From Malacoraja senta (lineage: Eukaryota), in assembly GCA_038087875.1 (NCBI GenBank), contig CM075999.1, forward strand, positions 3,844,001-3,908,000: DNA of 64,000 nt, read 5' to 3'. How positions within the stretch are numbered: the first letter of the stretch is position 1; the number at the start of each line of letters is the position of its first letter. Below the pieces are notes generated by a model, which was not told the origin of the DNA, ran no database searches, and saw nothing but the letters and a program-made list of their open reading frames with translations. A program made the position numbers and the translations under genes. Shown here one piece after another: positions 43,201 to 46,200 of the stretch.

Positions 43201-46200
43201 ATTTTCTGCTAATTGTTTTGAATTCAAAGAAATTCATCCCTAGCAAGTTCTCCTTTGGATTAATGGGCACAATTTTTTATTTTCAATACATTTGCATCCT
43301 TGTACGTTTGAATGTGAAAATAGGATATGCTTAATATACCATTATTAAATTACGGAATCCAAATCTAAATAGGATTACTTCTGGCGTTTCTTGTCCCCTA
43401 GAACACCAATTCTTTTAACTTTGTCATTGTTCTAGTGCTGTGTTATGTGCTGTGGACTAGGTGCAAATGCAAAGTGAAAAATGAAAATTCTTCTTCCTAC
43501 AATTATACATAATTTTATTTCAGAAAATATATTTTAGCATGCCCTTTCATTAACATTGAGATTGAATTAATGTTTTGAAGCATCAAAACTAAAATGGCAG
43601 ATTACACTGTTTTGGGAGGATTTTCTTTGGGGAAAATGACCTCCTTAAACTAATCTAATAAATTATATTTTGGGAAATATATTGTTATGGCTGCTAAAAT
43701 GTTTACGGCAGCTGACAAACTATAAATTAGAACAAAATATTTTTGGCATCTTGAAATCTATATCTTTTTCACGCATTTAAATAATCTATGATTTTTTTTT
43801 GTACACCAGTCCTGTGGCCATCATAATTTTGAAAATTTGAACAAATTAGAGCTTCCATTTCCTTAATTTTTTGCTTCAAGTTTGATTTAATGTCTGATTA
43901 TAAAAATCACTTAATATTTGCCTAAAGTCTGCTTTAGTATTTTAAAAATTAAATGCAGACCTAATCTATAGTTGATTTCATTTTGAATTCATGACATGTT
44001 AGGTCATCTGGCCTAAAATAATTTTTCATTTTTAATGAAATAATATAGTAGGAAAACTAAAATCCAGAATTGTAACGTTGAGTAAAAGTGTGGGGAGCAA
44101 CTGATCTTGCTGGGGAAAAAAGTAAAATGTTGCATTCCCTATTACTAATTCCAATCGTGGTAAGTATTCTTAGATAGCCATTAAAGTACAGTCAGTTGAA
44201 GGTGTGTGTTTTTAATGTTGCATATAACTTGGATATTAAAATACTACATTTATAGATGTTAGTTTGCTCTAAATCCTGTGACTAGCAGGACTTGGGAAGC
44301 TTGCTAAAATCTTAGAGCTGTTGATATGCTTCCACATAATGTAAACGTATTGTACCGATTTGTGTGGCTTGTGTTCTATTGTTATGGTGGTTGTAGGAAC
44401 TGCTAGTGCTGGTTTGTATTGCACTCCAGTATTACTTTTTCTAACAACTTTTTCTATTTATATTCCACTGTAAGTACTTAACTATAAGTTTGAATAATGA
44501 AATATATGATGGGTAGATTTAAGTTGTTTGTAAAATGTACCTGCTGGTGACTTTTATGGCTAGTTTTGGAGGTAGTCAAAAAATGATTTCAAACCCTGCA
44601 TGTTTGTCTCTTTATACCCATCCCCTGACATAATTTTTTTGTTGTTGTTGCCTCAGAAATTTTAAAGCATTCCGCTGTAACTGGCGATCCCACAAAGAGT
44701 ATGAAAGAGCCTTTTAGATAGAAATCCAAGCATAAGACAAGCAGACAAGCCAAAGACCTCTTAAGGATCAGGCTTGAAGAAAAGAGAGGGAGGGTGAAAA
44801 AGATTAAAGCTTGAAGAGGGAAAAGTCAAGGCTTCGATTTGTCCGCAATTGGAAAAAGGTTGTTTTGTCAAAGTCAAGTGTCTTATTTGGGCCAGCGCCT
44901 CATGTCAAGTCCTTCTGGCAAGCACTTAAAGAGTTAAAGGTCAAGCTGACGGTGCAAGGTCAAGTTTACAGCCAAATTTAAGGTAACCGGCAAAGTCCTG
45001 ATATTGTATCCTACTGTAGTGAAAACAATTAATTCGCTCTTTAAATGTTTTGATTGTGATTTTTACAAACTTAAATGATCCTTATGTAATACAAATCTGT
45101 AAAACGTTTAATTCATAATACTTAGTCTCAGTATTGCTGCTGATAAATTATTTTTTTAAATTTTCAATTGTTATTTTTGTTTGTAATGTTTGCAACCATT
45201 TATTTTTCCAACTACATTGGCTTGACAGGAGATGATGGGTTTAAATGCTCTTGTGATGAGTCCATTTTCCATCATGTGCTTCCAAAAATAAAGTTCCTGT
45301 CAGTTAATGCTCCCCTTTAAAAAAAAAAGTACCATTTTGGATTTCTCAAGCTTGTAGTTTTGTTTCTGTTTAAAGCTATTTAACTGCCACTCCTAAATCA
45401 ACTAGGTGCTGCAAAACTATAATTGCGAGTGCCATTGTGACTTGACCTAGTAAATGTAAAGCAGAGTTGACATTCATTGGCGGATGCCTGCAACCTGTCA
45501 GCACCTGTATATTGTGGGAGGCGTTTGCCTTCTGGGCAGGGTTTTGTCCCTTTGTGTGATCACTACTGTGGCACATGACTGGTGTTTCCCTGGTCCAAGA
45601 TGAATTTTACTGCAGTGAAGCTGTTTTGATGCTTTGACCAGCAGTGTAATATTGTTTTATATTTATAAGTTACTTAATTTTGTTTGCATAATTTTGCTAA
45701 ATCTTATTAATGAAGACAAACAGTGGTGATTGGATACAGCCTAACAATTACTTTGGGATGTAACATTGTAGATTAGTTTTAATTTTATTGTTTAGATGTA
45801 ATTGATATAACAATTTTGATTCAATGTAAAATTAGTAAACTTGTATGTGTATTTTAAGGAATAGACCGGATAATGGAACTTTAGCATCTTATGCAATTTT
45901 ATTTAAGAACTAGCTTTCTAGATTTTTGGCAAAGCATTGTTGTGGCTGAAAATGTGTATTAAAGATTGTAGGATTTGTTCGCAACCTGTGAAAGTGAAAA
46001 GCCCCCTTAACAGCTTAGCATGTTTGAAGATGTTCGTGATGCAGAGGATGCACTCCACAACCTGGACAGAAAGTGGGTGTGTGGCCGGCAAATTGAGATC
46101 CAATTTGCCCAAGGTGATCGAAAAAGTAAGTATAATTCAAATGAAATATTAAAATGAATGTGGCCTCCTTTACGTTGGCGAGACCAAGCATACATTAGGC

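What the first reader, a model, noticed from the sequence alone, without database searches (positions are those of the whole stretch)
45995..46030. SRSF10 minor intron appears to be AT-AT rather than AT-AC
The 5' splice site is ATATCCTT (39989). The 3' end reads CCCCTTAAC-agcttagcAT|G TTT GAA GAT. Restoring RNP1 (RGFAYIQF) and the 104-nt exon requires the intron to end in AT at 46020-46021, 11 nt after the branch A, which is a normal U12 distance. No AC is available. An in-frame AG 3 nt upstream (46017-46018, only 8 nt from the branch) would give AYIHMF and alter RNP1. Established: this intron is AT-AC in mammals and couples SRSF10 levels to minor-spliceosome activity. Inference: a rare AU-AU terminus could retune that sensor.
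Basis: partly seen in the sequence, partly recalled or inferred. Interest (0 to 1): 0.8.

Follow-up and report, generated by a model that had tools for sequence, protein, structure and literature searches.

The report
SRSF10 minor intron ends AT-AT
The minor-spliceosome intron inside this skate's SRSF10 gene really does end in AT instead of the mammalian AC, but gar, many teleosts and the paralogue SRSF12 share that ending, so it is an ordinary and probably ancestral fish state.

Summary
The intron runs 39989-46021. It starts ATATCCTTT and has the window's only plus-strand CCTTAAC branch box at 46005-46011. It must end in AT at 46020-46021, 11 nt after the branch A, to give RGFAYIQ|FEDV and a 104-nt exon. 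No AC is available, and the AG at 46017-18 would give AYIHMF.

The window's translation equals RefSeq SRSF10 models of two skates, Rhinoraja longicauda and Amblyraja radiata. Both models use the Q|FEDV junction.

The AT ending is not peculiar to this genome. The same CCTTAAC-N9-AT|G architecture occurs in spotted gar, in pond loach srsf10b, in four further fish or unidentified contig sets, and in an SRSF12-like contig. A frog locus has AT-AC, and ORF fragments read through the boundary imply AC in a bird and in fragments that look mammalian or avian. Other teleosts imply AA or AC, and one possibly AG.

In the loach, an intron-free transcript contig joins exactly at AT|G, although the same AG lies 3 nt upstream.

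AT-AT is a known rare U12 class, and AT-AC/AT-AT switches between species are documented. The "retuned sensor" idea remains untested, and the fact that the AT ending is not lineage-specific weakens it. The scan has not noted this before on other DNA.

The parts
39884..39988 (+). SRSF10 coding exon 2 (RRM, first part of RNP1 ...RGFAYI + CA of the Q codon)
   Evidence: Sequence and translation. tblastn of the skate RefSeq models P0056 and P0177 onto the window.
39989..39997 (+). U12-type 5' splice site ATATCCTTT
   Evidence: The same atatcctt(t) follows GFAYxQ(CA) in gar, loach, frog and teleost contigs.
39989..46021 (+). Minor (U12-type) intron, 6033 nt, termini AT...AT
   Evidence: The junction is implied by the conserved protein and the RefSeq skate models. 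The orthologous AT-AT junction is seen in a loach transcript contig.
44621..45300 (+). Candidate autoregulatory poison-exon region inside the intron. It has a 3'ss ...gcctcag near 44655, a GA-rich stretch at 44770-44830, a U12-like GTATCCTAC near 45006 and an AATAAA at 45288-45293.
   Evidence: Sequence. 44621-44964 is conserved with gar (E 3e-30) and 44735-44971 with frog (E 3e-13). The architecture is described for mouse in PMC7244321.
46003..46011 (+). Branch-site box CCCCTTAAC (core CCTTAAC at 46005-46011; presumed branch A at 46010)
   Evidence: It is the only CCTTAAC on the plus strand of the window. CCTT-R-AC is invariant in the 9-sequence alignment A1.
46017..46018 (+). Upstream AG, probably unused (8 nt from the branch A; would give AYIHMF)
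   Evidence: The same AG is present in loach, where the transcript contig uses the AT. It is absent in teleost L006 and in the SRSF12-like L015.
46020..46021 (+). 3' terminal dinucleotide AT of the intron
   Evidence: T at this column in 8 of 9 aligned loci and C in frog.
46022..46125 (+). SRSF10 coding exon 3 (104 nt; G completes CAG=Q, then [34 protein letters not shown])
   Evidence: Followed by the 5'ss GTAAGT at 46126.

Best explanation
This is the orthologue, in a skate, of the autoregulated U12-type intron of SRSF10, and it belongs to the AT-AT subtype. Inferred from what is known of U12 splicing: U11 and U6atac recognise ATATCCTTT at 39989, and U12 pairs with CCTTAAC at 46005-46011. 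The 3' splice site is then chosen mainly by its distance from the branch A (11 nt, within the 11-13 nt optimum) rather than by the identity of the last base. Cleavage would therefore fall after T 46021 and join ...ATACA to GTTTGAAG, restoring RNP1 (RGFAYIQF). Shown here: the terminal T is a common state of this intron in non-tetrapod vertebrates and in the paralogue SRSF12. Inferred: it is probably the ancestral state. Shown here: a frog locus has AC, and read-through ORF fragments imply AC in a bird and in mammal-like sequences. The AC state in mouse and human is published. Some teleosts have A or C, and one possibly G. Inferred: the last intron base drifts within the A-type (AT-AN) class without breaking the gene.
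For: Sequence anatomy. The window translation matches XP_078279471.1 (Rhinoraja longicauda) and XP_032900728.1 (Amblyraja radiata) at 100% except at the exon-edge residues where tblastn blocks run into intron; both models contain AYIQFEDV. Gar locus L008 reads atatcctttc...ccttaacagctcagcat|G, and its RefSeq protein P0188 contains AYIQFEDV. In loach srsf10b, the genomic intron L009:4294-4901 is AT...AT. The intron-free 1231-nt Logan contig L010 matches six exon blocks at 99-100% and joins 4293|4902 exactly. Three teleost contig sets (L001-L007) and one unidentified set (L011-L013) also end AT. The SRSF12-like contig L015 reads tccttaacagctgctcat|G. Alignment A1 shows an invariant CCTT-R-AC, conserved spacing and an invariant penultimate A. 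In the tally of ORFs read through the boundary, among SRSF10-like fragments, the residue before FEDV is M 29 and I 6 (AT), T 23 (AC), K 3 (AA) and R 2. From the literature: AT-AT is an established rare U12 class (6 human, 6 mouse) with human/mouse AT-AC to AT-AT switches (PMC1557818). It is the second commonest non-canonical type in animals (PMC10639083). The 3' base varies within AT-AN A-type introns (PMC8280824). The optimum branch-to-3'ss distance is 11-13 nt (PMC3584512).
Against: Use of the AT in this species therefore rests on RefSeq models, protein conservation and the loach transcript. Assembled contigs drop rare isoforms, so some use of the AG at 46017-18 cannot be excluded. The M-start ORF fragments are enriched by ORF-calling bias. 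The species behind the Logan contigs L001-L007, L011-L013 and L015 are unknown. The ancestral-state inference lacks sharks, chimaera, lamprey, coelacanth and lungfish.
Confidence: 0.88

Rival explanations
1. The AG at 46017-18 is the 3' splice site actually used (an AT-AG U12 intron), giving a protein with AYIHMFED.
For: The AG is in frame and is conserved as cAGCAT|G in skate, gar, loach, L001 and L003.
Against: The AG lies only 8 nt from the branch A, below the 11-13 nt optimum. It would disrupt the invariant RNP1. The loach transcript contig, in the same context, uses the AT. L006 and L015 lack the AG but keep the AT. The skate and gar RefSeq models carry QFEDV. AT-AG combinations are reported as disfavoured (PMC3584512).
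Confidence: 0.04
2. Base 46021 is an assembly or sequencing error and the true intron is AT-AC.
For: None found. This is only the prior expectation from mammals.
Against: Runs X19 and X20 (two samples) hold 13 of 13 sampled words across the boundary. A contig from another run (SRR089296) encodes MFEDV, that is ATG. T is the state in 8 of 9 aligned orthologous or paralogous loci. X19 and X20 may be the assembly's own data, so they are not fully independent.
Confidence: 0.02
3. The terminal T is a functional retuning of the SRSF10/minor-spliceosome sensor. It would lower or raise second-step efficiency relative to AC and so shift the balance between productive minor splicing and poison-exon use.
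For: Non-canonical U12 termini often splice with reduced efficiency in experiments (PMC3584512). The intron sits in a competition circuit where efficiency matters (PMC7244321). The poison-exon region is present in the skate.
Against: AT is not lineage-specific. It occurs across skate, gar, teleosts and SRSF12. The poison-exon region is conserved in both an AT-AT species (gar) and an AT-AC species (frog). The last base also varies to A and C, and possibly G, among teleosts, which looks like drift. No efficiency measurement is available.
Confidence: 0.1

Closest known systems
Mouse/human SRSF10 autoregulated U12-type intron (Meinke et al. 2020, eLife, PMC7244321)
   Same: It occupies the same position in the gene, splitting the Q codon of RNP1 RGFAY(V/I)Q|FEDV. 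It has the same ATATCC 5' splice site. An internal region homologous to the poison exon, with a GA-rich stretch and a poly(A) signal, is present.
   Different: The 3' terminal dinucleotide is AT rather than AC. The competing downstream major 5' splice site was not verified in the skate. Regulation was not tested.
AT-AT subtype of U12-type (A-type, AT-AN) introns, e.g. human ERCC5 and IK, mouse Gpaa1 and Slc9a8 (Sheth et al. 2006, PMC1557818; de Wolf et al. 2021, PMC8280824)
   Same: A U12 5'ss and branch box with a terminal T in place of C. Orthologues in other species carry AC, which is the kind of AT-AC/AT-AT switch already tabulated between human and mouse.
   Different: This instance (SRSF10 in fishes, SRSF12) was not named in any paper I could search. 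Here the AT state is broadly conserved across fish lineages rather than being a single-species switch.

Membership tests
U12-type (minor spliceosome) intron | Extended 5' splice site /RTATCCTTT | tested here: met
   ATATCCTTT at 39989-39997, immediately after the exon. Conserved in gar, loach, frog and teleost loci.
U12-type (minor spliceosome) intron | Branch-site box TCCTTAAC about 10-15 nt from the 3' splice site, with no strong polypyrimidine tract | tested here: met
   CCTTAAC at 46005-46011, with the branch A 11 nt from 46021. It is the only copy on the plus strand. It is invariant in alignment A1. The upstream 25 nt are purine-rich.
U12-type (minor spliceosome) intron | Removal depends on U11/U12/U4atac/U6atac snRNPs | not testable with these tools
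   Shown only for the mouse/human orthologue, in PMC7244321.
AT-AT subtype (A-type, AT-AN) | The mRNA junction places AT at both ends of the intron | tested here: met
   In the window, the junction is fixed by the conserved protein and by the skate RefSeq models. At RNA level it was shown only in the loach orthologue (L010 against L009). Skate reads were not obtained.
SRSF10 minor/major competition autoregulatory module | Poison exon inside the minor intron with a GA-rich enhancer and a poly(A) site | tested here: inconclusive
   Sequence homology to gar and frog at 44621-44971, plus a GA-rich stretch and an AATAAA. Inclusion in RNA was not shown.
SRSF10 minor/major competition autoregulatory module | Competing major GT 5' splice site just downstream of the minor one, after an in-frame stop | tested here: inconclusive
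   There is an in-frame TGA at 40013-40015 and a candidate GTAAAG near 40091. Conservation ends about 14 nt into the intron, and there is no RNA evidence.

The most novel reading that the evidence does not exclude
The last base of the SRSF10 sensor intron (T in cartilaginous and most ray-finned fishes and in SRSF12, C in tetrapods) sets the efficiency of the minor-spliceosome step. On this reading, the change to AC in the tetrapod lineage altered the set-point that couples SR-protein levels to minor-spliceosome abundance.
Probability: 0.1. Interest if true: 0.45.

Novelty: new member of a known kind. Interest (0 to 1): 0.22.

Why it matters
AT-AT U12 introns are a known rare class, so the mechanism is not new. 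The useful points are practical and comparative.

1. The best-studied regulatory minor intron, that of SRSF10, is AT-AT in skate, gar, the teleosts sampled here and an SRSF12-like paralogue contig. The mammalian AT-AC form may therefore be the derived state.

2. This offers a natural allelic series (T, C, A and possibly G) for testing whether the 3' terminal base tunes a minor-splicing sensor.

3. The AT|G ending creates a spurious ATG and misleads gene modellers. Examples are Chanos AYIMFEDV, Polypterus AYIQYIFEDV and many MFEDV... pseudo-ORFs. This is worth knowing when annotating fish genomes.

Tried and rejected
- **Read laying.** I ran it on window:44000-48700 with X19, X34, X1 and X4. 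No read or contig junctions were obtained for skates. The 6033-nt intron also exceeds the 6000-letter limit, so both splice sites could not have been laid together in any case.
- **The look-up of sequencing runs.** It gave only word shares. RNA runs of organisms A, B and C, and a DNA run of organism G, hold 6 of 13 words (the exon only). That cannot separate 46019 from 46022.
- **The look-up of encoding contigs.**
  - No record for the skate isoforms P0056 and P0177.
  - No DNA for the Scyliorhinus torazame gene or for the SRR089296 contig, because the files are too large. Sharks and a second skate could therefore not be read at DNA level.
- **Papers.** Dietrich et al. 2001 and 2005 on U12 3' terminal nucleotides are not held. 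Efficiency statements rest on the review PMC3584512.
- **Junction-shift ambiguity.** I considered and rejected it, because the flanking bases differ.
- **A U2-type 3' site at the AG.** I considered this unlikely, because the tract upstream is purine-rich.

Full report
**What is in the sequence.** Exon 2 of an SRSF10 orthologue ends ...GGATTTGCATATATACA at 39988 and is followed by ATATCCTTTC. The next coding exon starts at 46022 and is preceded by ...AGCCCCCTTAACAGCTTAGCAT. Joining 39988 to 46022 gives an open frame reading ...[43 protein letters not shown]. The exon is 104 nt, ends before GTAAGT, and is continued in frame by [11 protein letters not shown] at 46921. The intron is therefore 39989-46021, AT...AT. 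The AG at 46017-18 would give AYIHMF, and there is no AC other than the one inside the branch box. CCTTAAC occurs once on the plus strand of the 64-kb window, with its second A 11 nt before 46021. The junction cannot slide by a base, because the flanking bases differ.

**Whose gene it is.** A full-library HMMER search with the exon-3 peptide returned P0056. This is XP_078279471.1, srsf10b isoform X3 of the skate Rhinoraja longicauda, and it clusters with Amblyraja radiata isoform X2. Both map to the window's exons at 100% apart from the exon-edge residues where tblastn blocks run into intron. The window therefore comes from a skate, and the RefSeq models of two skate species use the Q|FEDV junction, which is the AT 3' site.

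**Is base 46021 real?** Two genome-size runs of the same organism, from different samples, hold all 13 sampled 31-mers of 45990-46130. RNA runs of related organisms hold only 6 of the 13, presumably those internal to the exon. A contig from a different run (SRR089296) encodes MFEDV..., so it has ATG at this spot. It differs from the window by one codon further into the downstream intron, so it is not the same sequence. The same-organism runs may be the assembly's own data. Even so, with the cross-species data below, an assembly error is very unlikely.

**Is it peculiar to this genome? No.** I searched the ORF that reads through the boundary. It gave dozens of small ORFs from genomic contigs that begin [12 protein letters not shown]..., that is ATG TTT, meaning the intron ends in AT. 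Fragments that look mammalian or avian read (S/P)TFEDV, that is ACG, meaning AC.

I fetched DNA for the following loci:

| Locus | Species or source | 3' end |
|---|---|---|
| L008 | spotted gar | atatcctttc...ccttaacagctcagcat\|G |
| L009 | pond loach srsf10b | atatcctttt...ccttaacagcgcagcat\|G |
| L001-2 | unidentified teleost contigs | ends AT |
| L003-5 | unidentified teleost contigs | ends AT |
| L006-7 | unidentified teleost contigs | ctcgccat\|G, with no AG nearby |
| L011-13 | unidentified | ends AT |
| L014 | bullfrog | ccttgactgcaagcac\|A (AT-AC) |
| L015 | SRSF12-like contig | tccttaacagctgctcat\|G |

In the nine-sequence alignment, CCTT-R-AC, the spacing and the penultimate A are invariant. 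The last base is T in eight loci and C in the frog.

Named gene models that read through the boundary imply AA in Alosa, AC in Boreogadus and possibly AG in Paramisgurnus srsf10a. Among SRSF10-like read-through fragments, the residue before FEDV is M 29, I 6, T 23, K 3 and R 2. The M class is inflated, because ORF callers start at ATG.

**Is the AT actually used?** The direct evidence comes from the loach. A 1231-nt Logan contig (L010) encodes the complete RefSeq protein. It matches the genomic locus in six blocks at 99-100% with the introns absent, and it joins L009:4293 to L009:4902, exactly AT|G. The same AG sits 3 nt upstream there, as in the skate. The gar RefSeq protein also carries AYIQFEDV.

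**Mechanism.** By established knowledge, U12-type 3' splice sites are chosen largely by distance from the branch site (optimum 11-13 nt). Non-canonical terminal bases support U12 splicing, often less efficiently (PMC3584512). The skate AT lies at 11 nt and the AG at 8 nt. AT-AT is a recognised subtype:
- There are six cases each in human and mouse, with several AT-AC to AT-AT switches between the two species (PMC1557818).
- It is the second commonest non-canonical minor type in animals (PMC10639083).
- It falls within the CENATAC-dependent A-type AT-AN class (PMC8280824).

**Relation to the SRSF10 sensor.** In mouse, the minor 5' site competes with a downstream major site that leads to a poison exon with a GA-rich enhancer and a poly(A) site (PMC7244321). 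The skate intron contains a region (44621-44971) homologous to gar (E 3e-30) and frog (E 3e-13), with a GA-rich stretch and an AATAAA. The module thus appears to be present in both AT-AT and AT-AC species. This argues against the terminal T being a special retuning in this lineage. An efficiency effect remains untested.

**Verdict.** This is a real AT-AT U12 intron, correctly read by the first stage. It is a member of a known class and is widespread in fishes. I found no paper naming SRSF10 as AT-AT in fish, but public RefSeq models already encode the junction. Interest is low to modest.

Noticed in passing
window 44621-45300: This region inside the minor intron is homologous to gar and frog SRSF10 introns. 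It has a GA-rich stretch (about 44770-44830), a U12-like GTATCCTAC near 45006 and an AATAAA at 45288-45293. It looks like the mammalian poison exon 3 with its unused minor 5' site. If that site were ever spliced to 46021, the intron would be GT-AT.
   Followed up: partly
window 39800-46300: Transcriptome-size runs of three related organisms hold 0.1-0.37 of the sampled words of this mostly intronic stretch. That suggests substantial transcript coverage of intronic sequence, from the poison-exon isoform, intron retention or expressed repeats.
   Followed up: no
The tool says this is not evidence of anything, but it blocks read-laying across the poison-exon enhancer region.
   Followed up: no
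P0218/P0226 (Chanos chanos srsf10b), P0064 (Polypterus), P0071/P0073, P0059 (Alosa), P0065 (Paramisgurnus): Public gene models mis-join this intron, giving AYIMFEDV, AYIQYIFEDV, GFATFEDV and read-through of intron ends. Non-AC termini of this U12 intron evidently mislead annotation pipelines.
   Followed up: partly
L015:620-645: An SRSF12-like genomic contig has a perfect TCCTTAAC box 11 nt before an AT|G exon start. The paralogue therefore seems to keep a U12-type AT-ending intron at the same position. Its 5' splice site and species were not seen.
   Followed up: partly
window 46155-46157: The window has TGA where the otherwise identical ORF from run SRR089296 (P0001) has a Leu codon. This is an intronic difference between skate samples or species.
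   Followed up: no
L001, L003, L006, L009 (teleost loci): In these teleost copies the minor intron is only about 600-880 nt, and no homology to the poison-exon region was detected by blastn. These copies may lack the autoregulatory exon.
   Followed up: no
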